A DNA stretch of 64,000 bases, taken from IMG/VR virus record IMGVR_UViG_3300028558_000016, positions 124,001 to 188,000 of that record; one strand, 5' to 3'. Below the pieces are notes generated by a model, which did no database searches, was not told where the DNA came from, and saw nothing but the letters and a program-made list of their open reading frames with translations. Below are positions 309 through 55,184 of the stretch, piece by piece; within the stretch, counting starts at the first letter, position 1, and every line of letters begins with the position of its first letter. The position numbers and the translations under genes were made by a program.

Positions 309-385
309 GGGGCCTTAGCTCAGTTGGCCAGAGCACCTGCCTTGCACGCAGGGGGTCATCGGTTCGAATCCGATAGGCTCCACCA
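309..385 (+). tRNA. tRNA-Ala(TGC), CCA encoded
   Basis: GGGGCCT/AGGCTCC with G3:U70, anticodon arm CCTGC-CTTGCAC-GCAGG, ends ACCA. Confidence 0.98.
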
Positions 386-399
386 AATGATTAGTTGAA

Positions 400-677: not shown

Positions 678-751
678 GCTCCTGTAGTGGAACTGGTTAA
701 CACGTCCGCCTTTCACGCGGAAGATCGCGGGTTCGAACCCCGTCGGGAGTA
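678..751 (+). tRNA. tRNA-Glu(TTC)
   Basis: GCTCCTG/CGGGAGT, anticodon arm TCCGC-CTTTCAC-GCGGA, T-loop TTCGAAC. Confidence 0.95.
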
Positions 752-756
752 CAAAT

Positions 757-842
757 GTTGCCGTATGCAAATTGGTTTAAGCGAACAGACTTTCAATCTG
801 TGTTCCGTATGGAACGTGCGGGTTCGAACCCCGTCGGCAATA
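757..842 (+). tRNA. Atypical class II (long variable arm) tRNA with TTC (Glu) anticodon
   Basis: GTTGCCG/CGGCAAT, anticodon arm ACAGA-CTTTCAA-TCTGT, variable arm GTTCC-GTAT-GGAAC, T arm GCGGG-TTCGAAC-CCCGT, A73. Confidence 0.85.
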
Positions 843-928
843 CAAAAATAAAATAATAGGAGGACCCAGGCTGTGGACGCAACAAAAATGTAATTTCTCT
901 TTACGAACAGTTTTGCAAAGAGAACGGA

Positions 929-1720: not shown

Positions 1721-1785
1721 CTCATTTGGCTTAGAGCGCTTGCCTGGCAGGCAAGAGGTGACGGGTTCGAAACCCGTAGGCTCCA
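1711..1785 (+). tRNA. tRNA-Ala(GGC), overlaps alaS stop codon
   Basis: GGGGCCT/AGGCTCC with G3:U70, anticodon arm CTTGC-CTGGCAG-GCAAG. Confidence 0.95.
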
Positions 1786-1855
1786 CTATCGGAAAGGATC
1801 ACAACATCCCGTACGAGAAAGAACGACACAACTGTTGTGAGTTGGAAAGTTCTTC

Positions 1856-1927
1856 GGGATCATAGTATAAGGGCAAGTACGCATCCCGCTCAGGGATGAA
1901 ATGCAGGTTCGAATCCTGTTGGTTCTA
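1856..1927 (+). tRNA. Atypical tRNA, CTC anticodon with G33 and G3:U70
   Basis: GGGATCA/TGGTTCT (3 G:U pairs), D arm GTAT..GTAC, CATCC-CGCTCAG-GGATG, T arm GCAGG-TTCGAAT-CCTGT. Confidence 0.75.
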
Positions 1928-1932
1928 CAATT

Positions 1933-18812: not shown

Positions 18813-19937
18813 ATGGCTCGCTTAACAGAAAACACAAGCATTAAGAAAAGAACACAATCGCCTTTAGATAAAGTATTCTGCGACGAACCCTACGCGCAGG
18901 AGTTGTACGAGAAGTACTGCGATTATTTTGAAGGGAAAAAGGTCACATCAAAAGACATGGAGACCGGCGAGATGTGCAAAGCACAAGTAATCTCGATCAA
19001 CGGCAACAAGATCCTTGTTCAAGCCGACAACACGCAAGCAATTTATCTCGATCTTCTAAAGGAAAACAAGTTCCTCGAAAAACAAGGAATAACTGAAAAC
19101 CTTAGAACAGGAATGTTCGTTGACGTTCTCGTCGACGGTTCAGACAAAGGAATGTACACCGGCTCAATGGAGAAGGCATTCAAATCAAAGATCAAGAAGG
19201 AATTAATGGTGGCCTTGAAAAACAAGGACTCAGCATACAAGGTGACTGTCAAGAGCATCAACGAAGGAGGATTCATAGTTGACCTCGGCGGACTCGATTG
19301 CTTCATGCCAGGTTCTTTGGCTGCAGCAAACAAGATCACAAACTTCGAATCAATGCTTGGAAAAGAAATCTACGTAATGGTAGAAAACTTCCTCGAAGCA
19401 TCTGACATGTTTGTGGTATCAAACAAGAAATACATCCAATCGATACTTCCATCAAAAGTAAAAGAACTCGATTTCGGAAATACATACTCAGGAACTGTAA
19501 CAGGCGTAATGGCCTACGGAGCATTCATCGAATGGGACGACATCTTCACTGGACTACTTCACGAAAGCGAAGGAGACAACATCAAGAATCTTAAAGCCGG
19601 AGACGAAATCCAATTCTGGGTTAAAGAGGTAAGAGAAGGTGGAAAAGATATAAGAATAATTCTAACCCAAAAAGGTCCTTCAGCAGAACACAAGCTGTAC
19701 CAAGAATTCAAGGACAAGTACGAAGGAGAAATATTCGCAAATGCAAGAGTAAAAGACATAAAACCTTTCGGAGTCTTCATCGAAATGAAGGACGGAATAG
19801 TCGGAATGCTTTCGCCAAGAGAATTCAAAAAGCTTGGTAAGTTCAAAGAGGAAGACATGGTTGACGTTCACGTTAAACAGGTAGATGTTGGAACTAAAAG
19901 AGTTCACCTTAAAGCATTAACAGACGATGAATCCTAA
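18813..19937 (+). CDS. Ribosomal protein S1-like multi-S1-domain RNA-binding protein
   Basis: About 4 S1 repeats: NEGGFIVDLGGLDCFMPGS, VTGVMAYGAFIE..GLLHESE, VKDIKPFGVFIE..GMLSPRE. Confidence 0.88.
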   Translation: MARLTENTSIKKRTQSPLDKVFCDEPYAQELYEKYCDYFEGKKVTSKDMETGEMCKAQVISINGNKILVQADNTQAIYLDLLKENKFLEKQGITENLRTGMFVDVLVDGSDKGMYTGSMEKAFKSKIKKELMVALKNKDSAYKVTVKSINEGGFIVDLGGLDCFMPGSLAAANKITNFESMLGKEIYVMVENFLEASDMFVVSNKKYIQSILPSKVKELDFGNTYSGTVTGVMAYGAFIEWDDIFTGLLHESEGDNIKNLKAGDEIQFWVKEVREGGKDIRIILTQKGPSAEHKLYQEFKDKYEGEIFANARVKDIKPFGVFIEMKDGIVGMLSPREFKKLGKFKEEDMVDVHVKQVDVGTKRVHLKALTDDES

Positions 19938-21637: not shown

Positions 21638-23062
21638 ATGAACATTCAAGACGAAAAAATATTAGCCGGAGTCGTTCTCGGCTTTGAGTGGGAATTTTAT
21701 TCCAACAAGACCAGACATGAGATTGCTAAGGAAGTAGGATCAATCGTGAAGAAAAAGATCAAGGTCGGCGACATGTATCACTCAGAGACCGAAATTGGTG
21801 ACAACGTTTGGAAGATCGAACCAGATTTCTCAGGTGGAATAAGAATGGTTGAGCTCATCACTGAGCCGATGCCATACCACGAAGCGATTGCAACACTGTT
21901 CAAGGTTTTAACCTGGATGAGAGAGAACGCATGGACAGACGAGAAGTGCGCTTTGCACGCCAACATATCATTTGACAAGTTCAAGCTCACAGACATGAAG
22001 GACAGAATTGAAGCCATCAACAGATTGAAATTCGTTCTTGGATTCGACGAGGATTTCGTTTACGAAAGATTCCCTAAGAGAAAGACTTCCATCTACGCGA
22101 GAAGCATCAACAGCATATTTCCTATTAACAAATTCGTATATGCAGACAACGTCGACACCATACACAAAGAAAATTACGAGCTTCCTTCTGAAAAGTATTT
22201 CGGAATTAACTTCTCGAAACTTGACAAGGAATACCTCGAGATAAGATACATGGGTGGAAGAGGCTATGAGAAGAAAGGTCACGCAGTTAAAGAGATAGTC
22301 GATTACGTTGCACTGTTCACATACAACACCCTTCAAAACAATTACACATACACGGCAGTTGAGGTTTCCAAATTAAAGAATGCAATGAAGGACTACCAAA
22401 AAGTGGTTCAATCTTTTTCTGACATCGACGCATTCTTCTTGAACTATCCAAACATAAGACTCTTCGTGGATCTAAAAGGAGAACGTGAAGTTCTTAAAAC
22501 CTTCTGGACCAAATTAAGAGACCAATTATTCGATTTAATAGTTCGATGCGGAATGAGAAGAGGAATGATCAACTATGACGCTGATGTCGCAAGATACCAG
22601 GTAAAGGATGCCATTCTTCAAAAGGCTTTCCCCATCAGAGGAATGGAAATATTCGATTGCAAGATACATTCAGGAAACATCCTGGAATGCGATCTGTATC
22701 GTTGTGAGATAACTAACGCTCATATTTTAGATTCAAATCTCTATTCAGGAAACAACGTCAAGAAGAGCAAGATCATCAACACGCCATTCCACTCATACAA
22801 CGAATGCAGCGACACTTACATAGACAACAAGAAGCACATCATCAACGGAAAGGTTGAGAGAGGCATCATTCGTTCAGGTGACATCGGTCCAACTGCAAAA
22901 ATCTCAAAAGAGACGGAAGTCATTCAGGCAATCCTGGATGGAAAAGATCACAAGGACACTCCAGGAAAACAAGGTGGTCCATCAAGACAAGGTGGAAAAG
23001 ATAAGGACATGCCAAGAACAAATCCAGGTTTCAAATTCAAGATGCCTCAAAATGAAAAATAG
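21638..23062 (+). CDS. Putative amidoligase (COOH-NH2 ligase type 2) with C-terminal beta-repeat extension
   Basis: GFEWEF, WKIEPDFS, ELITEPM, CALHANIS, KYFGINF, LEIRYMGG. Confidence 0.75.
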   Translation: MNIQDEKILAGVVLGFEWEFYSNKTRHEIAKEVGSIVKKKIKVGDMYHSETEIGDNVWKIEPDFSGGIRMVELITEPMPYHEAIATLFKVLTWMRENAWTDEKCALHANISFDKFKLTDMKDRIEAINRLKFVLGFDEDFVYERFPKRKTSIYARSINSIFPINKFVYADNVDTIHKENYELPSEKYFGINFSKLDKEYLEIRYMGGRGYEKKGHAVKEIVDYVALFTYNTLQNNYTYTAVEVSKLKNAMKDYQKVVQSFSDIDAFFLNYPNIRLFVDLKGEREVLKTFWTKLRDQLFDLIVRCGMRRGMINYDADVARYQVKDAILQKAFPIRGMEIFDCKIHSGNILECDLYRCEITNAHILDSNLYSGNNVKKSKIINTPFHSYNECSDTYIDNKKHIINGKVERGIIRSGDIGPTAKISKETEVIQAILDGKDHKDTPGKQGGPSRQGGKDKDMPRTNPGFKFKMPQNEK

Positions 23063-36492: not shown

Positions 36493-38253
36493 ATGGCAAC
36501 CACCTCAACAAATAGCACACCGTCACTCGTCATGTTCCAGAAGAGCAGACTTGCGATAGAGCTTCTCATAAAGGATACGATCGAATATACGGTAACGACT
36601 TTCAAGCAAGGAAGAACAAACTTCACCGTGGCTTCTGCCTATGGTCAGATCATATTCGTTACGCAAAACATCGCACAGCTCATACTATATTACATCGAAG
36701 ATTCCATCACGGAATTAAACATAAGAACTGCGACAAGGTCAAACTCAGTTTATGGAATTGCTACTCTTGCAGGGCACAATCCAACAAGAGCTGTTGGTGC
36801 AACCGGCGAGATAAGTCTTCTTGCAAAGAATCCAGGAACTACAGACATCCCAAGCGGAATAGTCGTAATTCCTAACTTCACAAAGATCAAGTGTAAGAAC
36901 AACGGATTGGATTACATCATAGATCTTCCAACTGACGACATAAGAGTTTCTGCAAACGGAAACAATAACGGAATATCGATGGGAATAATTCAAGGAACCA
37001 TTGAGACCCAGACGTTCACAGGAACTGGAGAGCCTCTTCAATCCGTAAGTGCAAGCATTCAACAGACCGCATTGGTAGATAACTTCTTCGTAAACGTTTA
37101 TGTGAACGGAGAGAAGTGGAAGAAGTATGATTCGATTTATGACATTCCAAGAAATGGAAAAGGTTACATAATCAAAAATGGCATCACAAGCGGAATAGAC
37201 GTTTTCTTTGGTAACACAAACTTTGGATTACAACCAGTATTAGGTGCAGAAATAAACGTTGAGTATCTTGTTACATCAGGTCAAACTGGAAACATAACTC
37301 TCACCGATACTGAGGAAGCTCTTTACGAATGGACCGACACAGGCTTCACGATATTCGGAGATGACGTTGACTTGAACGAAACTTTCTTGATCAAGAACGT
37401 TAACGCACCAGATTTTGGAACAAATCCAGAACCTCTCGCATTGACGAGACTCGTTGCTCCTAAAGTTTCGAGAAGCTTGGTTCTTGCAAATCCAGACAAC
37501 TACATAATTTTCTTTGAGAAGTTTAATTTATTTTCCATCATAGACGCGTTCTCAACTCCAGGAGACAACAACATAGATGACGACAACGTGATCTACGTAT
37601 TTTTAATTCCAGATGTTAGAAAGAGAATGAAGAGCAACGAGAATTATTTCACCATCGAAGAAAGCAGATTTGTTTTAAGCACTAACCAAAAGAATAAAGT
37701 TCTTGATTACATCGAGAGAAGCGGTTCAAAGATCGTTACGACTATCGTGACTTTGATAGATCCTGTTTTCAGCAGATACGTGATTAACATTGCGTTGATC
37801 ATCTTTCAAGGACACTCAGAAGAGAGCATCAGACAGGCAGTGTTGCAAAGGCTTTCCGATTACTTCATTCAGATAAGAAGAAGAGACAGAATACCAAGAT
37901 CGGATTTAATTTCAATAATAGAAGGAATTGATGGAATTGACACAGTCAACATCAGCATAGTTTCAGAAAGAGATGAGCTTGATTTCATAAAATGGAGCGA
38001 GCTTACCGATGCACAAAAGCTTACGATACCTCAACCGACTCCAACAGCGTTGGACGAGTTTGGAGACATCATAATCAAGCAGAGGGATCTTCCAATAATC
38101 AAAGGTGGTTGGGACGATAGAAGAGGAATCACTTATGAGACTGGAATAAACGAGGATAAACCTTCTGCAGTTAATATAATAATAAAAGACGTTGTTCCAA
38201 AGACTTACAACACGGATTTTAATGCCAACACAAAATCAGATCTTAGGGGATAA
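36493..38253 (+). CDS. Baseplate wedge protein (T4 gp6 / baseplate J-like)
   Basis: ELNIRTATRSNSVYGIATLAGHNPTRA, VYVNGEKW, VFFGNTNFG..P..GAEINVEYL.TSG..GN. Confidence 0.8.
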   Translation: MATTSTNSTPSLVMFQKSRLAIELLIKDTIEYTVTTFKQGRTNFTVASAYGQIIFVTQNIAQLILYYIEDSITELNIRTATRSNSVYGIATLAGHNPTRAVGATGEISLLAKNPGTTDIPSGIVVIPNFTKIKCKNNGLDYIIDLPTDDIRVSANGNNNGISMGIIQGTIETQTFTGTGEPLQSVSASIQQTALVDNFFVNVYVNGEKWKKYDSIYDIPRNGKGYIIKNGITSGIDVFFGNTNFGLQPVLGAEINVEYLVTSGQTGNITLTDTEEALYEWTDTGFTIFGDDVDLNETFLIKNVNAPDFGTNPEPLALTRLVAPKVSRSLVLANPDNYIIFFEKFNLFSIIDAFSTPGDNNIDDDNVIYVFLIPDVRKRMKSNENYFTIEESRFVLSTNQKNKVLDYIERSGSKIVTTIVTLIDPVFSRYVINIALIIFQGHSEESIRQAVLQRLSDYFIQIRRRDRIPRSDLISIIEGIDGIDTVNISIVSERDELDFIKWSELTDAQKLTIPQPTPTALDEFGDIIIKQRDLPIIKGGWDDRRGITYETGINEDKPSAVNIIIKDVVPKTYNTDFNANTKSDLRG

Positions 38254-39125
38254 TGAAATTAGAATGCGTAATAATTTGCATCAATTACAGTGACTTCTTG
38301 AGCCACACATTACCATCCAACAAATCTCTTTGCGACAGGATTGTCGTAGTGACCGACGCAAAGGACACAAAAACAAAAACAGTCTGCGAGTTTTGGAACG
38401 TGCAATGCGTTCAAACGGATGACGTGTATCAGAACGGCTCGAAGATTCCCAACAAGGGAATTGCAATAAATAAAGGACTTGAAGTATTGTCTAAAAGCGA
38501 TTGGGTCCTTCACATGGACGCAGACGTTTTTCTTCTTCCTCTCACTCGACAAATTCTTGAGAGAATGACTTTAGAAAAAGACAGCTTGTATGGAACCGAC
38601 AGGATGATGTGCGAGTCCTATGAGGATTGGCATTACTTCCTTCACCCAACAACAGAGGCAAAATCTTTGCATGAGGGTTGGATATACCTTCACATGGACA
38701 GATTTAAAATAGGAACAAGACTCGTGCAATACCACGAGGGAGGATATTGGCCTATTGGATATTTTCAATTGTGGAATCCAAAAGGAAGCGGAGTGTTCGA
38801 TTATCCAGTTGAAGGAGTTGGATTCGACAGAACAGACGTCGTTCATCTGAAGAGATGGGAATCAAGCAAAAGAAGATTCATTCCTGATTTCGTTGTTGTT
38901 CACCTATCAAACGAATCACACGGACAAGGACAGAATTGGCATGGAAGAAAAACGAGAATGTTTGAGCCAGAGTTTCAAACAAACCTGGTGAAGGGAATAA
39001 AAAACTTCTTTGGAAAAATCAAAGAGAAGATAAAGAAATTCATCAAGAAGAAAGAAACAAAGATAGAACATAAGCCGAAGAAGGAAGTAAAAAAAGAAGA
39101 GCCACCAAAAGGATATGCCACTTAA
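38253..39125 (+). CDS. GT-A fold glycosyltransferase (family 2-like)
   Basis: VIICINYSDFL, IVVVTD, NKGIAINKGL, WVLHMDADV, GYFQL. Confidence 0.8.
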   Translation: MKLECVIICINYSDFLSHTLPSNKSLCDRIVVVTDAKDTKTKTVCEFWNVQCVQTDDVYQNGSKIPNKGIAINKGLEVLSKSDWVLHMDADVFLLPLTRQILERMTLEKDSLYGTDRMMCESYEDWHYFLHPTTEAKSLHEGWIYLHMDRFKIGTRLVQYHEGGYWPIGYFQLWNPKGSGVFDYPVEGVGFDRTDVVHLKRWESSKRRFIPDFVVVHLSNESHGQGQNWHGRKTRMFEPEFQTNLVKGIKNFFGKIKEKIKKFIKKKETKIEHKPKKEVKKEEPPKGYAT

Positions 39126-43977: not shown

Positions 43978-44259
43978 ATGAGACACATAAAGCTTTTTGA
44001 AGCATATAATGCTGACAAGGTCCAAAGCGAATACGATGACATCATGGACGGTGCCGGTTGGGCAACTGATGGATACATCGATAATTTTTCCCCATTAAAC
44101 AAAGAAGAAAAGTATCAGCTTATGCTTAAGTTAGCAAAGAGTGGAAAACTTTTTGACGAAGATATTATTGGAGACGATGATAGTGGCGAAATGCCGAAGA
44201 AGGGTAAGATGTCTGTCAAAGACGTTGAAGAGAATTGGTCGTACTCCAAGAAAAAATAA
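43978..44259 (+). CDS. Leader-tagged hypothetical protein
   Basis: MRHIKLFEAYN; RATATATA 4 nt upstream. Confidence 0.78.
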   Translation: MRHIKLFEAYNADKVQSEYDDIMDGAGWATDGYIDNFSPLNKEEKYQLMLKLAKSGKLFDEDIIGDDDSGEMPKKGKMSVKDVEENWSYSKKK

Positions 44260-44265
44260 TATAGC

Positions 44266-45036
44266 ATGGCAAACAAAAGAAAAGGTAAGAAGTTTTCCAA
44301 AGAGGAAGAGGAAGAAATTCTGAACACCATGGAAGATAGAAACGCATCTAAGAATCCACTTAGTGCTAAGATAGATTTAAAGTGCAAAACAAACAATCAG
44401 AAGAAATTCATTAATCTCATAGCTGAGAAGGAGATAGTAATAGGTGCCGGTTTCGCTGGTACTGGAAAGACTTTTCTCTCCTGTGCAAAAGCGCTTCTTC
44501 TTTTGAAAGCAGATTCAAGATACAGAAAGATAATGCTCGTTAAATCCGTAACAGGATTAAAAGGAGAAGACATAGGTTTCCTTAAAGGCGAATTATCTGA
44601 CAAGATGGCACCTTACATGGAATCATTTAAGGACAACTTCAAAAAGATAATTGGAAAACCTGCCACTGACATGTTAGAAAACATGGGAATGATAGAGATT
44701 CAGCCTCTCTCATTTGTAAGAGGAAGAACCATCGACAACACAATCATGATCATTGACGAGGCTCAGAACATAAGCTTCGACAACATGAAAACGATCCTAA
44801 CGAGAATAGGTGAGAACAGCAAGATCATCGTCATAGGTGATACTAAGCAGATCGATTTAAAGAACAAGAGAGAATCTTCTTTAATGCAGTTGATGGAAAA
44901 ATTCAGCAAGAACGATTTGTTTGGAGTCATGCAATTTGAGAAGAGCGATCAGGTGAGAAATCCTATCATCAACATCATAGAAGAAATATTTGATGAATTA
45001 GAAACTGAAAACAAAGAGAATAAAAAAACCCGCTAA
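44266..45036 (+). CDS. phoH: PhoH family ATPase
   Basis: GFAGTGKT, IGFLKGELSDKMAPY, FVRGRTI, IIDEAQN, LTRIGENSK, GDTKQID. Confidence 0.95.
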   Translation: MANKRKGKKFSKEEEEEILNTMEDRNASKNPLSAKIDLKCKTNNQKKFINLIAEKEIVIGAGFAGTGKTFLSCAKALLLLKADSRYRKIMLVKSVTGLKGEDIGFLKGELSDKMAPYMESFKDNFKKIIGKPATDMLENMGMIEIQPLSFVRGRTIDNTIMIIDEAQNISFDNMKTILTRIGENSKIIVIGDTKQIDLKNKRESSLMQLMEKFSKNDLFGVMQFEKSDQVRNPIINIIEEIFDELETENKENKKTR

Positions 45037-45050
45037 ATTGCGGGTTTTTT
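45022..45050. terminator. Bidirectional terminator at convergent gene junction
   Basis: AAAAAAACCCGC-TAAATT-GCGGGTTTTTT spanning both stop codons. Confidence 0.85.
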
Positions 45051-45593
45051 CTTTTTGTTTATTTTCTTATCTAAAGCTTTTTTAGCTTCTTCCACCGTTG
45101 GCGGTTTGAAATTTTGTGTTATTTCTTTTTCTATTTCTGCAAGTGTTGTTCGTATCAAGTAATGAATTGGAACCTCTCTGAAGTCTGTTCTCTTTTCATC
45201 TTTAGCAAATTCTGTTCCGGCATTCAAATCAACTACTTCTATCAATGCTCTTAGATCATTATAATCTGCCATTGGGTAATAAGCAACCTTACATGCAACG
45301 ATTGAACCATCTCTGCTTGCCATTGAATAAACATCTCCTATTTGATGGGTCAACCAAAATTCAGTGTACTGGTACCTTGTGAATTTAATTTTTCCATCAA
45401 AGCTTTCTTTGTGTTTTGTAAAACAATGCTTGATGGTCTTAAATTTCTTCTTTGTTTTGTTTTCTGGATTCAAACACAGAAAACAGACAAAATCAATACA
45501 TGCCATTCTGACATTTCCTGTTTTAGTTTTCCCAATCACCTTCTCAAGAAGATCGAAGAACAATGCTAAGAGGTTTTTATTTTTCACGTTCAT
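45033..45593 (-). CDS. Hypothetical protein (start revised)
   Basis: MNVKNKN..., avoids long overlap with upstream ORF. Confidence 0.55.
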   Translation of the reverse strand: MNVKNKNLLALFFDLLEKVIGKTKTGNVRMACIDFVCFLCLNPENKTKKKFKTIKHCFTKHKESFDGKIKFTRYQYTEFWLTHQIGDVYSMASRDGSIVACKVAYYPMADYNDLRALIEVVDLNAGTEFAKDEKRTDFREVPIHYLIRTTLAEIEKEITQNFKPPTVEEAKKALDKKINKKKKPAI

Positions 45594-45879
45594 TAAGTTT
45601 ATTACGAATTTCACCAACAGAAGTTTGCATGAAATCACTTTTCCATTGTCCTTGCCATTGAACCATAACCTCTGTATCATCTGGTATATCTTTGTGCACA
45701 GTTATAAAATCTGTTGCTTTATTTACAATCACTACCTTGACATAATTGACCTTATTGAGGCTTCTTCCTGTCACAAATACAAGAAATGGGTGTTGTGTTA
45801 ATTTTAGGTCAAGTATTCCGCTTTCCCAAAAATCAGGAGTTGTTTCTCTTCCTTCTGTTATTACTGCTATTTTTTTCAT
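45577..45879 (-). CDS. Hypothetical protein
   Basis: 100 aa; VQWQGQWKSDF. Confidence 0.65.
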   Translation of the reverse strand: MKKIAVITEGRETTPDFWESGILDLKLTQHPFLVFVTGRSLNKVNYVKVVIVNKATDFITVHKDIPDDTEVMVQWQGQWKSDFMQTSVGEIRNKLNEREK

Positions 45880-46281
45880 TTATTTACTGTTTGTTGAATA
45901 TAACCAAGCTTCAAATAATTTTACAGCTTGGGCATCTCTATACAATTCAAATTCAAGAAATTTTCTTTTCGTATCAAATTTCTTGTTGTACAATCTTCCT
46001 ATTTTTTCCATTTGGTTCTCGCTCCAGGCAGGAATGATCGTAACGCTTTCATCTTCTTCGATTTTCTTTTGTTCTACATAGTGGTGAATCTTATTAAAAA
46101 ATTTTTCATTCAAGTGATACACTTCTTGATATGAATTTCCATCATCACCTTTAACGTCGAAGATGAACACAAATCTCTCATCGAGATAATCGCGTATCTC
46201 ATCTGAGAGCTTCCAATCCTTCTTGTCTCTGGCTTCTCTTCTTATGTCGATCAAATGATCAATGTACAAATAATCTAACAT
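45880..46281 (-). CDS. Stand-alone CysRS C-terminal (anticodon-binding)-like domain protein (start revised)
   Basis: IDHLIDIRREARDKKDWKLSDEIRDYL....IFD..G. Confidence 0.7.
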   Translation of the reverse strand: MLDYLYIDHLIDIRREARDKKDWKLSDEIRDYLDERFVFIFDVKGDDGNSYQEVYHLNEKFFNKIHHYVEQKKIEEDESVTIIPAWSENQMEKIGRLYNKKFDTKRKFLEFELYRDAQAVKLFEAWLYSTNSK

Positions 46282-46282
46282 A

Positions 46283-46780
46283 CTACTTTTTATAAATGAA
46301 ATATTTTTTCCTGATGTCATCTCTGAAATCAGAGAAATTTCCGTTTCCATTGTATGCAGCATTCCAAATGCTCTCAATGAGTTCGCTGTCCTTGTCTTTG
46401 TAATCCTTGTATTGCGTCTTAAGCTGTTCAAGAGTAAAAGTTCCGCATGAATGATCGGCCTTCAAATAATATTTTCCGATTTGTTCAGATTTTTCTGTGC
46501 ATTTATCTTTCCAGATCTGGAATTCATCTTCCTCGGATAACGGCGTGTTCCAAATTCTAACCACCATGAAGATTAATCCAGCAATCAATGCCGAAATCAT
46601 TCCCCATTTATTACCAACAATCACTGAGCTCCATAGAAGAGCTGTGATCATTTGTACAGGAACTATACTTGAGAATTTGCTAAGTACTTTTACGATGTAT
46701 GCTTCATACATTACTGTCACGAGATTGAAGCTCATGAATAAAGAAGCAAAAATGGTTATGAATAATAAGAAATTGTACAT
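46283..46780 (-). CDS. Membrane protein
   Basis: Three N-terminal TM segments. Confidence 0.65.
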   Translation of the reverse strand: MYNFLLFITIFASLFMSFNLVTVMYEAYIVKVLSKFSSIVPVQMITALLWSSVIVGNKWGMISALIAGLIFMVVRIWNTPLSEEDEFQIWKDKCTEKSEQIGKYYLKADHSCGTFTLEQLKTQYKDYKDKDSELIESIWNAAYNGNGNFSDFRDDIRKKYFIYKK

Positions 46781-46813
46781 GGGTTTTGTTTTTTTAGTTT
46801 TTTTAGTTTATAA

Positions 46814-47248
46814 TTAAATTATGTTTTCGTGAATAGCAGTTATTTTAAATTTGAAATTTTCATTTTCGGCATCGAACTTAAAACCTCCATCTGTGAAATA
46901 TGGAAAATCATCTTCTGCTTTTTTCATTAGTTTTAATTCATACGTCTTTTCGATGTGCTTTATTAATTTATCGCGATCGTAAGAATTATAAGTCACCAGT
47001 ACTTGGCTGTCATCATGCTTGAAAATTTTGATGATGTTTGCCACTAACATTTGTTTTGGAAATACTTTGACTTGTTTATTTACTTGCATCAGATGATCCA
47101 ATTTTGTGACAACAGGATCATTTCCATAAACCAAACCGATTGCGTAGGATCCTGAAGCATAAGCCAAATCCAGATGTTGGTAATCTGTTGGTTTTGTTGT
47201 TAATTCTCCATTTTCTGGATTAAATAATAATATATTTTTCTTCATCAT
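46814..47248 (-). CDS. Hypothetical protein
   Basis: 144 aa ORF. Confidence 0.6.
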   Translation of the reverse strand: MMKKNILLFNPENGELTTKPTDYQHLDLAYASGSYAIGLVYGNDPVVTKLDHLMQVNKQVKVFPKQMLVANIIKIFKHDDSQVLVTYNSYDRDKLIKHIEKTYELKLMKKAEDDFPYFTDGGFKFDAENENFKFKITAIHENII

Positions 47249-47254
47249 GTTATT

Positions 47255-47479
47255 TTATTTTACTGTTACATATTTGGATAGCCTTATTGCTTTGCTTACT
47301 TCCGGCCTATATCCAATTGGAAGTTTTGCATTTTGTAGTATTTCTTTTATTCCTAATCTCTGTATGTCTTCACTGTGTTTAATAGAAAATACTATTATCG
47401 CGGTGACCTTCTCCTTCTTTGGAGCTTTGCTGTAGGTGTCAGCGAGCAACTTTCCTATTTGATCAATTGATTTTTTCAT
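47255..47479 (-). CDS. Small HTH-like protein (start revised)
   Basis: YSKAPKKEKVTAIIVFSIKH...Y.PEVSKAIRLSKYV. Confidence 0.55.
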   Translation of the reverse strand: MKKSIDQIGKLLADTYSKAPKKEKVTAIIVFSIKHSEDIQRLGIKEILQNAKLPIGYRPEVSKAIRLSKYVTVK

Positions 47480-47564
47480 ATCGCATGCTCTATTATTAGA
47501 GACATTATACAAACTCCAACAAGAAGTCCTAAGTAAAATGCTGCAAAAAGATTTTTATTTTCCA

Positions 47565-49469
47565 TTATTGATTTATTAAACGTGAGTTATAAATTTTTCC
47601 ATTCTTATTAATGCTGATTAAATACATTCCAGGTTTGTCCAAATTGATTGCCACTTTACTATCAACAGTTAAGTGTAAAGTATTTTGGCCAAGAGAGTTT
47701 ATAACATCAATAGTTGCATTTCCCGCATCAACGGTGAACTGACCATTTGATGGATTAGGATAGATTGATATTCCAACAGGAACAGTGTAAGAAGTTATCC
47801 CAGTGGCAACTCCTGTTGTGATGGTGAAGCTCTGAGTTGTTGTACAACCTTTGCTGTCTGTGATCAAACATGTATAAGTTCCACCAGTTAATCCAGAAGC
47901 AGTTTGTGATGAACCACCAGATGGTGACCATGAATAAGTATAGCCAGGAGTTCCGCCTGAAGGAATTACATTAGCAATTCCATCATTTGAGCTTGGTGAT
48001 GTTTCATTTGTTTGCGAATTAGTTGCAGACAAAATAATTGGTTGAGTGATATTAAAGTTCTTGGTGATCGAACAATTGTTTGCATCTTTAATTACACAAG
48101 AATAAGCACCTTGCGAAAATCCAGAAGCAGTTGAAGATGTTCCACCAGTTGGAGACCATGAATAAGTGTAACCAGGAGTTCCACCTGATGCAACAACTGT
48201 TGCTGAAGCATTACTTCCACCATTGCAAGATACATTAGTCTGAAATTGATTTGCCGTAACAGCACTTGGTTGAGTCACTATAACAGTCATTGTTTTAGTC
48301 ATGGTTGAAGCATCAATAACTTTCACAGTGTAAGTTCCTGCAATCAATCCACTAACAGAAGCAGTTGTGTAACTTCCAGGAGACCACGAATAAGTGAAAC
48401 CAGGAAGACCACCTGTTGGTGTGCATGTTGCTGAACCATTATTTCCACCATTACAAGAAACACTTGATGATGTCATGTTCAATACCAATGTTGGATTTGC
48501 GTTATATTTAGCTATGTTGTTAAATGGAGTGGTGAAATTTCCGCCTGCATATAATTCACCATTGTAAACCGCCAAGCAAGCAATCGTTGAACCAATTGCC
48601 GATGGGATGTTAGACATTGAAACACCATTCCAAATTTTTATTCCTGGTGCAGCTGAATTTGCAGTATAAAGATTCCCACTGTAAACTTCCATTGGACCTT
48701 GAGTTCCAGCTTGACCACCAGTAGAAGCAAATGTTGTTCCATTATATTTAATAAATCCAGCAGAAACTACACCGTTGAATCCAACCATTCCGTTTCCGAA
48801 ATAAATATTTCCAGAATAAGTTTTTGCACCTTGAACAGATACAGCAGTATAAGTCGTTGGAACTGGACTCAAAGAGGTAGTAAATGTTTCAATAAATCCA
48901 GGCCATGTTCCAGTGATGTATAATTTATTATTATAAACTTCCAAATCCTGTATTTCATAACTATTAAGATTTGGACCAATTTGTGTAGGAGCATAATTAT
49001 TTGATGGATCACATTGTATGAGATAATGAATACCCGAAGAATATCCTCCAAAATAAATATAATCATTCATGCCATTTAATACACACGGAGGATAATTACA
49101 AACTGTTCTAAAACCATATCCTGGAGAAATTCCTCCAATTCCAGTTCCCATTCCTGAAACAGTATACCAATTAGAACCATTGTATACATATATGCTGTCT
49201 GAACCTACCACAACATCACTTCCATGAACTGTAATACATAGACCTGCAAAAGTTCCAGGATAGCCTGGGATTACTGTCCACGCAGTTCCATTCCAATATG
49301 CAACTTTTCCAGTGAAGGCGCCTGTTGCATAAAGACGATTGGTCAATGTGTCATTGTATAAACCATTGACATTTCCATTTAAGCCTGCTCCAACGTTGGA
49401 CCAAACTTGTGCTGTCGAATTCATTATTGACATAAGACAGATTGCGATTATTGCTATTTGTTTTTTCAT
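47565..49469 (-). CDS. SprB-repeat protein with T9SS type A C-terminal sorting domain
   Basis: Signal peptide, propeller-like N-domain, three (T/S)nVSCNGG..ATV..SGGTPGYTYSWSP repeats, ISIYPNPSNGQFTV...NSLGQ...PGMYLI...RLINQ. Confidence 0.9.
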   Translation of the reverse strand: MKKQIAIIAICLMSIMNSTAQVWSNVGAGLNGNVNGLYNDTLTNRLYATGAFTGKVAYWNGTAWTVIPGYPGTFAGLCITVHGSDVVVGSDSIYVYNGSNWYTVSGMGTGIGGISPGYGFRTVCNYPPCVLNGMNDYIYFGGYSSGIHYLIQCDPSNNYAPTQIGPNLNSYEIQDLEVYNNKLYITGTWPGFIETFTTSLSPVPTTYTAVSVQGAKTYSGNIYFGNGMVGFNGVVSAGFIKYNGTTFASTGGQAGTQGPMEVYSGNLYTANSAAPGIKIWNGVSMSNIPSAIGSTIACLAVYNGELYAGGNFTTPFNNIAKYNANPTLVLNMTSSSVSCNGGNNGSATCTPTGGLPGFTYSWSPGSYTTASVSGLIAGTYTVKVIDASTMTKTMTVIVTQPSAVTANQFQTNVSCNGGSNASATVVASGGTPGYTYSWSPTGGTSSTASGFSQGAYSCVIKDANNCSITKNFNITQPIILSATNSQTNETSPSSNDGIANVIPSGGTPGYTYSWSPSGGSSQTASGLTGGTYTCLITDSKGCTTTQSFTITTGVATGITSYTVPVGISIYPNPSNGQFTVDAGNATIDVINSLGQNTLHLTVDSKVAINLDKPGMYLISINKNGKIYNSRLINQ

Positions 49470-49478
49470 GTTTTATTT

Positions 49479-49670
49479 TTATTTTATTTTATCAAACGGC
49501 GAGAACGAAGTGCCGTCACCTTCTTTTTTAGGTTCTTCTTTTTTCTCAACAGGTTTTGTTTTCACTGTGTCAAGATGTGAGAATGGAGAATTAACTATTG
49601 GTTTATCGTCGCCACAACTTAAGAGTGTAACTCCAACTGACAATATTAAAAGATTTTTGATTGTTTTCAT
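49479..49670 (-). CDS. Small lipoprotein (start revised)
   Basis: MKTIKNLLILSVGVTLLSC. Confidence 0.6.
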   Translation of the reverse strand: MKTIKNLLILSVGVTLLSCGDDKPIVNSPFSHLDTVKTKPVEKKEEPKKEGDGTSFSPFDKIK

Positions 49671-49671
49671 A

Positions 49672-50145
49672 TTACTTTTTGTTATAAGTTGAAGAACCAC
49701 AGTATTCGCACATGTTACCGTGCCATTTATTACCACCACAACTATTGCAATTGCCAGTATGTGAATATACTAAATTTTTATGACTATTTCTTACTCCGAA
49801 ATCGTGCACTACGTAATCATTTTCATCTTCAAATTTAATGAAAAGGCCAAGGAATTTTTTTGGAAAGGATTTCATTAATTTTCCAATGGTTGACAGATTA
49901 GCAAGGATGAACAATAATAAAAGTACTAATGGAAATACAAGCAACATTGTCTCGGTAGAAGAAAAAATGTCAAGCAAATTAAAGTGACTTGGAATTAGTT
50001 TATCTTCAACGTTTGATGTTGCAACGTTTACTAAAACTGCATCGCCGTCTTTCATGACGGCGGAAGCAGTGTATTCTTTTGTGCTGACTATTGATTGGCC
50101 AAACATGTTGGCCGTGATCAAAAATAAAACCGCAAACTTTTTCAT
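49672..50145 (-). CDS. Membrane protein with C-terminal zinc ribbon
   Basis: Signal peptide, TM, CNSCG......CEYCG. Confidence 0.65.
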   Translation of the reverse strand: MKKFAVLFLITANMFGQSIVSTKEYTASAVMKDGDAVLVNVATSNVEDKLIPSHFNLLDIFSSTETMLLVFPLVLLLLFILANLSTIGKLMKSFPKKFLGLFIKFEDENDYVVHDFGVRNSHKNLVYSHTGNCNSCGGNKWHGNMCEYCGSSTYNKK

Positions 50146-50456
50146 TAGTTATAAATAAATTTACGGTTCATTGAAGCTGCCATATCAACAAGCATGGAAG
50201 TTTCTCCGATGGTGTTCACGAATTTTCCATGAAGCCTGCGATCCTTTTTCATGAGTTTTTCCATTTCATCCATTTGTTTGGTGTTCTCGAAAAATTCCGC
50301 CTGTTCGCGTAACTCATGATGTTTTTTTCTGATGCTGATTTGATTCTCAACATTTTTTACTAAAGACTTCATCACGTCTTCTTTTTTTACTGGTTTTACA
50401 TTCGACAGCATTTCTAACAATGCAATTATCGGATGATTTTGATTTTGTTTTCTCAT
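50145..50456 (-). CDS. Hypothetical protein
   Basis: First gene of minus block; TATATTTA box at 50480-50487. Confidence 0.6.
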   Translation of the reverse strand: MRKQNQNHPIIALLEMLSNVKPVKKEDVMKSLVKNVENQISIRKKHHELREQAEFFENTKQMDEMEKLMKKDRRLHGKFVNTIGETSMLVDMAASMNRKFIYN

Positions 50457-50639
50457 GGTTGGTTGTTTTAATTTATATGTAAATATACTAACTTTTTTCC
50501 ATATATAAAAATGATTCTTATAACTTATTGATAATCAAGCAGTTACGTTTTCCATTATACCTCGATTTCCTAATGGATTTAAGGCTTCAATCATCATTAA
50601 ATTTTGGCGAATATATACATAAACTAAAACTAATCATAC

Positions 50640-51359
50640 ATGGCTATAGTCATCACAGAGATTCTTGGCACTGACCCGTTTAGCGGTTCGAGAATCGTAA
50701 TAAACGCAAACTTCCAATCATTAAAAACTGAAGTGGAAGCGCTGGAATCTAATCTCGGGATTAGCGTTGCATCAGGAAATATTGACATTTCTGCAGCGAT
50801 AGGTGGACAAATAAAAGCAAAAGTTGGAGCATTCAATAACATCCAACTTCCAGTAGCAGGAATTCCAAACATCACGCTTACCGGATCGACCGGAGCAATA
50901 GTTGGAAAAACGTTAACTCTTGCCACATCGGCAGTAATTCCAACGCTAACAGCAGACAATTTTACAGCCACCGCACTCGGACAAAGCATCTTCAATGGTG
51001 AAGCAACTTTCAACGCGTTAGTAAAGGTTACAGACGGTCTTGCTTACAACAAAGTAAACGTTGGAACAGTGAGCACTCACACGGTAATAAATTCAGACAG
51101 AGTGATTCTTTTCACATTGAACGTTTTATCACCAGGTGCTCTCGTCATAACTCCAGATGCTCAGTTGGTTGATGGTCACGTGGTAACCCTCGTTGACACA
51201 AGCAACGTGGCAACAACACTTGATACAACATTCATCATGGGAACTTGGGGTTCCATTACATTCGCTGCTGATGGTTACAAATCATGCATCACTTTAATGT
51301 GGAGCGTTGTAGATAACAAATGGATTATCATTGGTTCTTCAAATATGACAATTCTATAA
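50640..51359 (+). CDS. Virion structural protein (fibre/baseplate-associated)
   Basis: ITEILGTDPFSGSRIVINANF N-terminus; beta-rich; RATATATA upstream. Confidence 0.6.
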   Translation: MAIVITEILGTDPFSGSRIVINANFQSLKTEVEALESNLGISVASGNIDISAAIGGQIKAKVGAFNNIQLPVAGIPNITLTGSTGAIVGKTLTLATSAVIPTLTADNFTATALGQSIFNGEATFNALVKVTDGLAYNKVNVGTVSTHTVINSDRVILFTLNVLSPGALVITPDAQLVDGHVVTLVDTSNVATTLDTTFIMGTWGSITFAADGYKSCITLMWSVVDNKWIIIGSSNMTIL

Positions 51360-51724
51360 TGAAGCACATTAAGACGTATAACGAAGCTATCAACGAAGGA
51401 TGGTTGACTGATTGGCTCTTTAAAAGAACTTATAAGGTCAATTATACAACTGAACTTGTTGACAAGAAAACCAATGAACCGGTTTCTTATAAATCTTACT
51501 TGACTGTGAAGGCCAAGAACGAAGATGAAGCTCTCGAGAAATTTTATACCAAATGGGACGAGGCAATAAAAGGCTTTGACGTTGAACCTAAAGTCATAGT
51601 TGGAAATATAGTTAAAACAGACAAGGCAGATAAAATCAATATAGATCTTCCAAGATCCATACAGAAGATAAGCAAGGAAAAAGAAGTTAAAAAAGAAGTC
51701 AAAGACGACGAAAAGAAGAAATGA
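51359..51724 (+). CDS. Leader-tagged hypothetical protein (start revised)
   Basis: MKHIKTYNEAINEG; TAATG coupling. Confidence 0.75.
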   Translation: MKHIKTYNEAINEGWLTDWLFKRTYKVNYTTELVDKKTNEPVSYKSYLTVKAKNEDEALEKFYTKWDEAIKGFDVEPKVIVGNIVKTDKADKINIDLPRSIQKISKEKEVKKEVKDDEKKK

Positions 51725-52053
51725 AACACTTAAAGAGTTTTGAAAATCTTAATGAGAATGTCTTGCAAAACAAGCTGATTCCCATTTTTCCAGAAAATCC
51801 AACTTGGAAGTTAAGCGACTCGTGGGAAGGAAATGACGGAGACATTAATTTTTCTTTTACCAATGGACCTTTTGAAGTAACAGCAGAATTCTGGGATCCA
51901 ACAAGTACATACACCGTAGGTTTCAGAGAAACAGGAGACAAGTATTTAGTGCCTGAAGGAAAAAGGTATCAATCAGGAAATTTAAAAGATCTCGCAGAAG
52001 TTAAAAAAGAAATGTCCAAGATGATGGACTTCTTAGAAGAATACTCTAAATAA
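51721..52053 (+). CDS. Leader-tagged hypothetical protein
   Basis: MKHLKSFENLNEN. Confidence 0.78.
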   Translation: MKHLKSFENLNENVLQNKLIPIFPENPTWKLSDSWEGNDGDINFSFTNGPFEVTAEFWDPTSTYTVGFRETGDKYLVPEGKRYQSGNLKDLAEVKKEMSKMMDFLEEYSK

Positions 52054-54570: not shown

Positions 54571-55184
54571 TTATTTTAATAACTTGGTAATGAACTTATA
54601 AGAATCCATCAATTTGCTTAGGTCCTTAAAGTCAGGTGTAGCAGTATTCGTGAAATAGAAAGCATAGACTAACTTATTGGTTTTCAAGTCGTAGACGAAC
54701 TTATAACATTTGGATGGAACATATACATTTTTGATCTTTTTTCCATCAAATTCGTTGTAACAAATGACAATTAAAGAGTCTGTTTTTGACAGATTTCTTA
54801 TGACCGTTTCAAAGTGTTTCCAAGGACCCCTGTTCAATTCTGGTGTCTGTGGAGCGCAGTTATAATATCTGAAAGTGAGTTCTTCCAACACACAATCATT
54901 TGCAAAATCTTCTGCGTTTGCCATGTGACCCTTGTCGTAACCAGAAGCTCTATAATCGCTGTCGTATGCTGTCTTCAATCCTTTGATGTCGCATTTAAAA
55001 TCCATCTTTTGTCTGGAACATTCTCCACCTCCGTGATATAAAATATACTTCACTGCTACTGGAACTTCATAGGTCTTTGAGTAATAGCTTTATTTGTTAT
55101 CAAGGTGTCATACCTTAATGTGTCTTGGCCACGTAGAAGGAAAGAGGCCATAAAAATGAGGATGGATGTTAATAATGTTTTCAT
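54571..55184 (-). pseudogene. Secreted DNA/RNA non-specific endonuclease (NucA/EndoG family), frameshifted near 55090
   Basis: GYDKGHMANAEDF, NCAPQTPELNRGPW..FE; signal peptide MKTLLTSILIF.. from ATG 55184 is in another frame and stops after NKAITQRPMKFQ. Confidence 0.75.

What the first reader, a model, noticed from the sequence alone, without database searches (positions are those of the whole stretch)
47565..49469. Phage-encoded T9SS cargo with SprB repeats
Seen: signal peptide, propeller-like domain, three SprB-type repeats and a type A CTD, in a block with membrane proteins and a lipoprotein. Known: T9SS exports CTD proteins to the Bacteroidota surface, and gliding/T9SS surface components are linked to phage susceptibility in Flavobacterium. 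Inference: the phage uses host T9SS to display a protein, for receptor masking, superinfection exclusion or altered adhesion.
Basis: partly seen in the sequence, partly recalled or inferred. Interest (0 to 1): 0.6.

Follow-up and report, generated by a model that had tools for sequence, protein, structure and literature searches.

The report
Huge phage encodes T9SS-exported propeller protein
A 482-kb rhizosphere phage of Bacteroidota carries a conserved gene whose product has the signals for export through its host's type IX secretion system, a kind of phage gene already noted in two earlier genome studies but never tested at the bench.

Summary
Window 47565-49469 (-) is an intact 634-aa ORF. 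It has an N-terminal signal peptide of the Bacteroidota Q-rule type, a seven-bladed beta-propeller, three SprB-type repeats and a type A T9SS C-terminal domain (TIGR04183, 34 bits against a 23-bit cut-off).

The gene belongs to the phage. The record is a 482-kb virus with a T4-type major capsid protein, a baseplate, Dda helicase and PhoH. Contigs from independent rhizosphere metagenomes bridge both ends of the gene without a mismatch. Four diverged relatives carry the orthologue at the same syntenic position, three of them on contigs with phage-type neighbours.

Signal peptide, propeller and CTD are present in all five copies, and pairwise dN/dS is about 0.2-0.4. Two orthologues lack the SprB repeats, so these look like an optional stalk. 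The protein is not a SprB orthologue: it has no type B CTD.

It most likely crosses the inner membrane by Sec and the outer membrane by the host T9SS, then acts at or beyond the cell surface. Receptor masking or superinfection exclusion is plausible but untested.

Phage-encoded T9SS cargo is already reported (Bellas 2020; de Jonge 2019). This is a new member of a known kind.

The parts
47565..49469 (-). CDS of the 634-aa T9SS cargo protein (P0001), stop codon included
   Evidence: Orthologues at 67-70% identity (L001, L002) and 48-52% (L003, L004).
49410..49469 (-). Signal peptide, residues 1-20, with predicted cleavage S-T-A|Q that exposes Gln21 (Bacteroidota Q-rule)
   Evidence: Sequence inspection. 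Q21 and W23 are invariant in 8 homologues. All five phage copies start MKK. Q-rule described in PMC5837995.
48495..49409 (-). Seven-bladed beta-propeller, residues 21-325; the least conserved domain in two of the three full-length comparisons
   Evidence: AF2 mean pLDDT 85.8, pTM 0.87. Z 25-27 to seven-bladed propellers. Relatives carry PF17164/PF12768. 58-68% identity between full-length orthologues.
47805..48464 (-). Three SprB-type Ig-like repeats of about 73 aa each, residues 336-555; absent from orthologues L003 and L004
   Evidence: PF13573 in three stretches. The alignment shows a clean 220-residue presence/absence.
47568..47774 (-). Type A T9SS C-terminal sorting domain, residues 566-634
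   Evidence: PF18962 and TIGR04183 above cut-off. Seven strands at pLDDT about 93. Invariant Y-P-N-P, G594, G614, Y616.
49479..49670 (-). 63-aa predicted lipoprotein (lipobox L-L-S-C, then G-D-D); stop lies 9 nt upstream of the cargo gene's start; co-conserved with it
   Evidence: Orthologues in L001, L003 and L004 share the C-terminal SPFSHLDTV...DGTSFSPFD core.
49672..50145 (-). 157-aa protein with signal peptide (M-F-G|Q), one transmembrane segment and a C-terminal CxxC...CxxC zinc ribbon; co-conserved
50145..50456 (-). 103-aa soluble protein, first gene of the transcription unit; conserved in L001-L004
50477..50546 (-). Promoter-like box (TTTT, 19 nt, TATATTTA, resembling the Bacteroidota -33/-7 type) preceded by a perfect palindrome TAACTnnTTGATnATCAAnnAGTTA; both recur across the phage genome
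   Evidence: Also seen as loose ends to other contigs of equal depth.
45022..45051 (.). Bidirectional intrinsic terminator (12-bp GC-rich stem flanked by T runs) that closes the minus-strand unit against convergent PhoH
   Evidence: No comparably strong terminator lies between 50456 and 45051 on the minus strand.

Best explanation
The gene is a resident accessory gene of a lineage of huge phages with a T4-type capsid that infect a T9SS-bearing member of the Bacteroidota in soil or rhizosphere.

Proposed route of the protein:
1. It is made in the infected cell, probably from a Bacteroidota-type promoter that the phage reuses at several loci.
2. It crosses the inner membrane by Sec and is cut by signal peptidase I to expose Gln21.
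3. The host T9SS recognises its type A C-terminal domain and carries it across the outer membrane.
4. It is then either tied to the cell surface by the PorU/PorV-type attachment complex or released.

The working part is the seven-bladed beta-propeller, a binding module. The three SprB-type Ig-like repeats are an optional stalk that holds it away from the membrane.

What is shown: the architecture, phage ownership, conservation and purifying selection. What is inferred: the export route. What is only guessed: the target. My preferred guess is that the protein remodels the surface of the infected cell, blocking or masking a receptor so that other phages, or the phage's own progeny, do not adsorb. 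It may act together with the co-conserved small lipoprotein and the zinc-ribbon membrane protein.
For: **Export signals**
- Type A CTD above the curated cut-offs.
- The CTD models as a seven-stranded sandwich at pLDDT about 93, as solved CTDs do (PMC11285876). An invariant glycine, G594, lies between strands 3 and 4.
- The signal peptide, with Q at +1, is conserved in all homologues. This trait is specific to Bacteroidota (PMC5837995).

**Phage ownership**
- Gp23-type capsid protein, baseplate, Dda helicase, PhoH and a tRNA array.
- Runs X2 and X3, from other samples and studies, give contigs with zero mismatches that bridge both ends of the gene.
- The orthologue lies at the same syntenic place in four other contigs, from different samples. 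One of them, L002, is only 3 kb and shows little beyond the gene itself.

**Selection**
- Whole-gene pairwise dN/dS is 0.21-0.38; the propeller, SprB and CTD segments range 0.12-0.40.
- The closest bacterial full-length homologues are only 35-36% identical, so this is not a recent capture.

**Transcription**
- Four tightly packed genes sit behind a promoter/operator element that recurs at more than ten places in the phage genome.
- The only strong terminator in the scanned stretch is at 45022-45051.

**Host has a T9SS**
- A Bacteroidia MAG protein (P0240) has a CTD 83% identical to this one. That MAG gives 142 TIGR04183 matches, nearly all above the cut-off.

**Precedent**
- PMC7468147; PMC6949934.
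Against: - Nothing here shows expression, secretion or surface display. No RNA run holds the stretch.
- The signal peptide was judged by eye, without a trained predictor.
- CTDs can be incompatible between species (PMC11285876), and the host is not identified.
- The function is unsupported. The phage genome has no paralogue of the propeller, SprB region or CTD that would tie the protein to the phage's own receptor-binding proteins.
- The propeller fold matches many unrelated propellers equally well.
- Propellers and Ig-like repeats also occur on virions.
- dS is near saturation (0.6-1.4), so the dN/dS values are approximate.
Confidence: 0.7

Rival explanations
1. The export route is the same, but the purpose differs. 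The protein is an adhesin or lectin that changes how the infected cell sticks to roots, particles or neighbouring cells, or it is a released binding protein. The benefit to the phage would come through host behaviour, not through blocking adsorption.
For: - Bacterial T9SS cargo with lectin or propeller heads on Ig-like stalks are typically adhesins. RemA over-expression causes cell aggregation (PMC11205867).
- The bacterial relatives of the propeller are propeller-plus-CTD proteins of unknown role, found in many Bacteroidota.
- Bellas et al. proposed added enzymatic or competitive capabilities for Cryophage cargo.
- The phage comes from rhizosphere samples.
Against: - No ligand or lectin motif was identified.
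- In two of the three full-length comparisons the propeller is the least conserved domain (58-62% against 74-80% for the SprB part), and the gene evolves faster than the flanking core genes (79-86%). That fits an arms race better than a housekeeping adhesin, though it does not exclude one.
Confidence: 0.2
2. It is a virion protein, such as a tail-fibre tip or a capsid or tail decoration. On this reading the CTD-like sandwich and SprB repeats are simply Ig-like domains, and the N-terminal hydrophobic stretch is not a working signal peptide.
For: - Propeller domains are common in phage fibre and receptor-binding proteins at the fold level.
- The SprB region gives marginal sequence matches to two PDB chains named 'decoration protein' (8zvi, 5lxk; E 0.003).
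- Large uncharacterised, possibly structural genes flank the block.
Against: - A full Sec signal peptide with the Bacteroidota-specific Q at +1 is conserved in all homologues, bacterial ones included. Export would remove the protein from cytoplasmic virion assembly.
- The CTD passes the curated TIGR04183 threshold, not merely an Ig fold.
- The gene lies on the opposite strand from the large flanking genes, in a variable cassette with a lipoprotein and membrane proteins.
Confidence: 0.07
3. It is host DNA joined to the phage contig by misassembly, or a recent passenger gene of no use to the phage.
For: - All three domain types are typical of bacterial Bacteroidota proteins.
- The last 155 residues are 66% identical to a bacterial MAG protein.
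Against: - Contigs from independent samples bridge both junctions at 100% identity.
- Independent assemblies of diverged relatives (L001, L003, L004) place it in the same synteny.
- Whole-gene pairwise dN/dS is 0.21-0.38.
- GC content is uniform across the region.
- A phage-wide promoter/operator motif sits upstream.
- The best bacterial full-length match is only 35-36% identical.
Confidence: 0.03

Closest known systems
Phage-encoded T9SS cargo of 'Cryophage' (Bellas et al. 2020, PMC7468147)
   Same: Both are genes on a phage genome with a type A T9SS sorting domain. Both lie in variable regions of the genome. Both are interpreted as hijacking the host T9SS.
   Different: The Cryophage cargo are an endoglucanase, a GH39 and a PA14 protein. 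Here the passenger is a seven-bladed propeller with or without SprB repeats. Here the gene is a single, syntenic orthologue kept across a diverged lineage of huge phages, with co-conserved lipoprotein and membrane-protein neighbours.
T9SS sorting-domain proteins next to BACON-repeat ORFs in crAss-like cluster 2 phages (de Jonge et al. 2019, PMC6949934)
   Same: A T9SS CTD on ORFs of phages that infect Bacteroidota.
   Different: Those have different passenger domains (BACON), come from gut phages, and lie next to head genes. Their role was left open there as well.
Bacterial DUF5122/Rax2-type propeller plus type A CTD proteins of Bacteroidota (PF17164/PF12768 with PF18962)
   Same: The architecture is the same: signal peptide, roughly 300-aa propeller built on the repeating LYAGGxF...IAxWNGxxW motif, then CTD. 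Homology reaches E 1e-28 and below.
   Different: Identity is 25-36%. The phage protein itself does not reach PF17164 or PF12768 at E <= 1. The function of the bacterial proteins is unknown.
SprB gliding adhesin of Flavobacterium johnsoniae
   Same: Shares the PF13573 repeat type and secretion by T9SS.
   Different: SprB is a very large protein with many repeats (from my own knowledge) and a type B CTD bound by a PorP/SprF partner (PMC11205867). This protein has three repeats and a type A CTD. The genome has no type B CTD.
1670-aa protein of the 642-kb huge phage LR756502.1 (record positions 514378-519390)
   Same: Another huge phage that encodes a signal-peptide protein (A-W-A|Q) with SprB repeats and a T9SS CTD.
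   Different: It has thirteen SprB repeats, a PKD domain and a type B CTD (PF13585), and no propeller. It is not orthologous. It shows the theme recurs independently in huge phages.
Phage surface-acting superinfection-exclusion lipoproteins (T5 Llp, Cor; from my own knowledge)
   Same: A phage-encoded, exported envelope protein made in the infected cell. A small lipoprotein is encoded 9 nt upstream of the cargo gene here.
   Different: No sequence or structural relationship was tested or found. This is an analogy of role only.

Membership tests
T9SS type A CTD cargo (TIGR04183 / PF18962) | HMM match above the curated cut-off at the extreme C-terminus | tested here: met
   TIGR04183 at 34 bits (cut-off 23) and PF18962 at 34.8 bits (cut-off 27), residues 569-632 of 634.
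T9SS type A CTD cargo (TIGR04183 / PF18962) | Seven-stranded Ig-like 3+4 beta-sandwich with a conserved glycine at the beta3-beta4 turn | tested here: met
   The model has seven strands between residues 568 and 633 at pLDDT about 93. G594 is invariant. The criterion comes from PMC11285876. This rests on a predicted, not a solved, structure.
T9SS type A CTD cargo (TIGR04183 / PF18962) | N-terminal Sec signal peptide, so that the cargo reaches the periplasm first | tested here: met
   MKK n-region, 12-residue hydrophobic core, S-T-A|Q, conserved in 8 homologues. Judged by inspection, not with a trained predictor.
T9SS type A CTD cargo (TIGR04183 / PF18962) | Secretion that depends on the T9SS, with removal of the CTD | not testable with these tools
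   Needs expression in wild-type and T9SS-mutant hosts.
SprB gliding adhesin (orthologue of F. johnsoniae SprB) | Type B CTD (TIGR04131 / PF13585 CHU_C) for anchoring to a PorP/SprF partner | tested here: not met
   No PF13585 match anywhere in the 482-kb genome. The CTD here is type A.
SprB repeat-containing proteins (PF13573) | PF13573 repeats above the cut-off | tested here: met
   Whole protein 78.8 bits (cut-off 28), three stretches. The single copies score 48.2, 43.4 and 24 bits.
DUF5122 / delta-60 type beta-propeller (PF17164) | Pfam HMM match | tested here: not met
   Not listed for P0001 at E <= 1. Homologues at 25-35% identity do carry PF17164/PF12768, so the relationship is indirect.
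Seven-bladed beta-propeller fold | Seven four-stranded blades closing a ring | tested here: met
   pTM 0.87. Z 27.4 with rmsd 2.7 A over 275 residues to 2z2n, and Z about 25 to many seven-bladed WD40 and BT3049/BT4663 propellers. Seven LY-x-G-G-type motifs in the sequence.
Phage-encoded T9SS cargo (as in Cryophage, PMC7468147) | The gene lies on a bona fide phage genome, not on host DNA | tested here: met

The most novel reading that the evidence does not exclude
A lineage of huge soil phages keeps a three-gene envelope module: T9SS-displayed propeller, small lipoprotein and zinc-ribbon membrane protein. With it the phage uses the host's own type IX secretion system to repaint the infected cell's surface and shut out rival phages, or protect its own progeny. 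That would be a T9SS-dependent superinfection-exclusion system. The variable propeller, with or without the optional SprB stalk, would be the specificity element.
Probability: 0.2. Interest if true: 0.65.

Novelty: new member of a known kind. Interest (0 to 1): 0.42.

Why it matters
T9SS cargo shape adhesion, gliding, polymer breakdown and phage susceptibility in Bacteroidota (PMC9804748, PMC11205867). A phage that feeds its own protein into this pathway would be altering the host surface from within.

In the papers I found, phage T9SS cargo is known only from genome annotation (PMC7468147, PMC6949934). This locus offers a cleaner test case than those:
- a single orthologue conserved across diverged huge phages,
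- clear export signals,
- natural variants with and without the SprB stalk,
- a candidate host clade suggested by a CTD that is 83% identical.

It could be expressed in a tractable Flavobacterium to test T9SS dependence and any effect on adsorption.

Tried and rejected
- **Phage collection, DNA:** megablast of window 44000-52000 gave no match.
- **Phage collection, protein:** tblastn of the protein found only the SprB-repeat protein of LR756502.1.
- **Terminase:** PF17289 found nothing in the genome. I do not count this against a phage, because a Gp23-type capsid protein is present.
- **IMG/VR pattern scan:** found only one further viral contig, identical to L003.
- **GTDB genome scan:** found one bacterial relative, at 35% identity.
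- **Paralogues in the phage genome:** profile and phmmer searches of the six-frame translation for the propeller, SprB region and CTD found none with E below 0.07. The idea that the propeller copies the phage's own receptor-binding domain has no support.
- **Solved structures by sequence:** only marginal hits (E 0.003) to two chains named decoration protein.
- **Fold searches:** they confirm a generic seven-bladed propeller but give no functional lead. The rows are tied at Z 24-27.
- **RNA evidence:** none of the runs that hold the stretch is RNA.
- **sigma-70 consensus scan:** uninformative, with fewer sites than in shuffled sequence. Bacteroidota promoters differ from that consensus.
Full report
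**1. What is there**

Window 47565-49469 on the minus strand is a single intact ORF of 634 residues.

- **Pfam:** three SprB repeats (PF13573, E 2.3e-22, 78.8 bits against a cut-off of 28) and a C-terminal Por_Secre_tail domain at residues 569-631 (PF18962, 34.8 bits against 27).
- **NCBIfam:** TIGR04183, the type A T9SS sorting domain, at 34 bits against a cut-off of 23.
- **N-terminus:** MKKQ, then a 12-residue hydrophobic core, then S-T-A followed by Q. Cleavage after the alanine would expose glutamine. That is the Bacteroidota "Q-rule" for signal peptidase I substrates (PMC5837995). Q21 and W23 are invariant in eight homologues.
- **Start codon:** the gene caller behind the public protein (P0002, 622 aa) began at Met13. 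All orthologues conserve the MKK start, so the longer reading is the right one.
- **Residues 21-330:** no Pfam hit. They fold with mean pLDDT 85.8 and pTM 0.87 into a seven-bladed beta-propeller. The best match is Z 27.4 with rmsd 2.7 A over 275 residues to 2z2n. About 50 other seven-bladed propellers follow at Z 24-26, among them the periplasmic propellers of Bacteroides BT3049 and BT4663.
- **Full-length model:** the CTD forms seven strands at pLDDT about 93. The SprB repeats are less confident, at 60-79.

**2. Whose gene it is**

The window is bases 124001-188000 of a single 482,156-bp virus record with CheckV completeness 100.

The genome is a phage:
- a T4-type major capsid protein (PF07068, E 6.5e-44);
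- within the window, a baseplate wedge/J protein, a Dda-like helicase, PhoH and a seven-tRNA array;
- even GC content across the region, 0.34-0.40.

Three independent lines exclude misassembly:
1. The stretch occurs in several rhizosphere metagenomes from different studies. In runs X2 and X3, contigs with no mismatch bridge the 3' end of the gene (46562-47668; 47369-48258) and the 5' end (49316-50221; 49326-50169).
2. Four other contigs from different samples carry an orthologue (L001, L002, L003 = IMG/VR UViG_3300037010_004089, L004). Where the contigs are long enough, the gene sits in the same place. On one side are conserved genes of 239, 694 and 1193 aa (78-86% identity). On the other are PhoH and a 1088-aa gene (77-80%). 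L002 is only 3 kb and adds little context.
3. The nearest full-length bacterial homologues are only 35-36% identical (P0125; P0127 = L006, an uncultured Bacteroidetes MAG). The phage copies are 48-70% identical to one another.

**3. Evolution of the gene**

- All five phage copies are intact and keep the signal peptide, propeller and CTD.
- L003 and L004 (416 and 428 aa) lack the roughly 220-residue SprB block cleanly. The propeller runs straight into the CTD. The repeats are therefore an optional insert, most simply a stalk. The conserved core is signal peptide, propeller and CTD.
- Whole-gene pairwise dN/dS (NG86) is 0.21-0.38. The propeller, SprB and CTD segments range 0.12-0.40. dS is 0.6-1.4, so the values are approximate.
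- In the two comparisons that involve L001 the propeller is the least conserved domain (58-62% against 74-80% for the SprB block). Between the window and L002 it is the CTD instead (63% against 69% for the propeller).
- The whole gene (67-70%) evolves faster than the flanking core genes (79-86%).
- Downstream of the cargo gene the cassette has almost no matches in the relatives, apart from one ORF next to PhoH. The gene thus sits at the edge of a flexible region, as the T9SS cargo genes of Cryophage do.

**4. Neighbours and transcription**

Three upstream genes are conserved with the cargo gene in the relatives, although their order differs: upstream of the cargo in the window and L001, downstream in L003 and L004.
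- A 103-aa soluble protein.
- A 157-aa protein with a signal peptide (M-F-G|Q), one transmembrane segment and a C-terminal CxxC...CxxC zinc ribbon.
- A 63-aa lipoprotein (L-L-S-C, followed by G-D-D) with a conserved C-terminal core.

In the window these four genes are packed with overlaps or gaps of 1-9 nt.

The upstream intergenic region holds a perfect palindrome, TAACTgcTTGATtATCAAtaAGTTA. A box follows that reads TTTT, 19 nt, TATATTTA. From my own knowledge, this resembles the Bacteroidota -33/-7 promoter type. Both elements recur in the phage genome: the palindrome at ten or more sites and the box at five. They lie upstream of non-structural genes such as a ligase-like protein, a lysine/alanine-rich protein and a LemA-like lipoprotein.

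The only strong intrinsic terminator on the way is the bidirectional one at 45022-45051, against convergent PhoH. I infer one phage-controlled transcription unit of about 5.5 kb. Timing is unknown, and no RNA run holds the stretch.

**5. The host**

All the signals point to a T9SS-bearing member of the Bacteroidota:
- T9SS CTDs are restricted to the FCB group.
- The Q-rule is specific to Bacteroidota.
- A rough scan of the genome finds seven signal peptides with a small-x-small|Q site, the cargo's own among them, and about ten lipoboxes. This is a heuristic.
- The best SprB-region matches are Flavobacterium proteins at 55-59% identity.

The most specific clue comes from a search with the CTD alone. 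It found a 494-aa protein, P0240, of a Bacteroidia MAG (GCA_035567575.1).
- Its CTD is 83% identical to this one, closer than the CTD of the phage orthologue in L001 (76%).
- Its last 155 residues (one SprB repeat plus the CTD) are 66% identical, while its propeller is only 25-32% identical.
- That MAG gives 142 TIGR04183 matches, nearly all above the cut-off.
- CTDs can be incompatible between species (PMC11285876), so this resemblance suggests a host clade. It is not proof: nucleotide identity over the shared part is only 76%.

**6. How it most likely works**

- *Shown:* the architecture, phage ownership, conservation and purifying selection.
- *Inferred from established T9SS biology (PMC11205867):* Sec export, cleavage before Gln21, recognition of the type A CTD, passage through the T9SS, hand-over via PorV to the PorU/PorZ/PorQ attachment complex, then either surface anchoring or release.
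- *Guessed:* the purpose. T9SS-secreted adhesins such as SprB and RemA are thought to be phage receptors in Flavobacterium, and T9SS or gliding mutants resist many flavophages (PMC9804748). A phage-made surface propeller could therefore mask a receptor, exclude superinfecting phages or spare progeny from adsorbing to debris. I prefer this reading over a plain adhesion role because the gene evolves faster than its neighbours, and because it travels with a small lipoprotein.

No data here test that purpose. The phage genome contains no paralogue of the propeller that would link it to the phage's own receptor-binding proteins.

**7. Rivals**

- *Virion role:* propellers and Ig-like repeats do occur on virions. 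This is hard to square with a conserved, Bacteroidota-specific signal peptide and a CTD that passes a curated threshold.
- *Adhesin or auxiliary role:* the export route is the same and the aim differs. This cannot be separated from the exclusion reading here.

**8. Relation to what is known**

- The protein is a T9SS type A cargo by every feature that sequence can test.
- It contains SprB repeats but is not a SprB orthologue. SprB carries a type B CTD, and this genome has none.
- Its propeller is homologous to the DUF5122/Rax2-type propellers of many bacterial propeller-plus-CTD proteins, although it does not itself reach those Pfam models.
- Phage-encoded T9SS cargo is not new. Bellas et al. 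described three such genes in Cryophage and proposed hijacking of the host system, with possible roles in competition or superinfection (PMC7468147). De Jonge et al. saw T9SS sorting domains in crAss-like phages (PMC6949934). Q-rule signal peptides were noted in Porphyromonas phages (PMC10367356).
- I also found that the published 642-kb phage LR756502.1 encodes a 1670-aa protein with a Q-rule signal peptide, 13 SprB repeats, a PKD domain and a type B CTD. SprB-repeat T9SS cargo therefore recurs independently in huge phages.

**9. Verdict**

The mechanism up to export is a strong inference. The purpose is open. This is a new member of a known kind. What it adds is lineage-wide conservation, natural variants with and without the stalk, a co-conserved envelope module and a host clue. 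Interest is moderate.

Noticed in passing
window 50477-50546; further copies at G000:C1 49177, 55329, 248166-248257, 300686-300755, 303250, 330348, 330399, 333356, 337572, 366669, 426582-426651, 433454: A perfect palindrome, TAACTnnTTGATnATCAAnnAGTTA, often followed by a conserved box (TTTT, 19 nt, TATATTTA) and then a gene start 17-60 nt on. It looks like a phage operator plus a Bacteroidota-type promoter that defines a regulon of non-structural genes.
   Followed up: partly
L007 2973-7985 (LR756502.1 positions 514378-519390): The published 642-kb huge phage encodes a 1670-aa protein with a Q-rule signal peptide, 13 SprB repeats, a PKD domain and a type B T9SS CTD (PF13585). A SpoVR-like gene lies next to it.
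   Followed up: partly
L008 953-2437 (GCA_035567575.1, contig DATMPR010000337.1): A Bacteroidia MAG protein, P0240, has a CTD 83% identical to the phage CTD and one similar SprB repeat, but a divergent propeller. It lies among small ORFs with SymE toxin, M78 peptidase plus HTH, and ThiF plus JAB genes. The MAG gives 142 type A CTD matches. It is a possible host clade, or a partner in exchange of the gene's 3' part.
   Followed up: partly
L008 5308-5931 and G000:C1 75958-76266, 248614-248928, 479941-480264: A 207-aa ORF of the same MAG island is similar (about 40-50% in tblastx) to three separate places in the phage genome. This is a second gene shared between the island and the phage. Its function is unknown.
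   Followed up: no
L001 7128-7661 and 14273-15466; L003 4453-5067 and 6574-7275: Relatives carry GIY-YIG/NUMOD3 homing-endonuclease genes between the conserved 239-aa and 694-aa genes. L001 also has an AcrVA2-like gene (PF26125) next to PhoH. No counterpart of either turned up in the window: its only ORF there without a match in L001 is one of 110 aa (51721-52053).
   Followed up: no
window 39-1928: An array of seven tRNA genes: Asp-GTC, Glu-CTC twice, Glu-TTC twice, Ala-TGC and Ala-GGC.
   Followed up: no
G000:C1 9440, 44995, 149292, 193132, 194484, 227842 and about ten lipobox ORFs: A rough heuristic finds further ORFs with signal peptides that end small-x-small|Q, and about ten lipoprotein-like ORFs. 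The phage seems to encode a sizeable set of exported proteins tuned to Bacteroidota. Only one of them carries a T9SS CTD.
   Followed up: partly
window 54571-55053 (-), 38253-39125 (+), 18813-19937 (+), 21638-23062 (+), 47255-47512 (-): Other annotated genes in the window: a non-specific DNA/RNA endonuclease (PF01223), a GT2-like glycosyltransferase (just under the cut-off), an S1-domain RNA-binding protein, an amidoligase-like protein, and an HTH_73 protein directly downstream of the cargo gene. The large ORFs of 694, 1088, 1193, 1268 and more than 1708 aa have no Pfam match.
   Followed up: no
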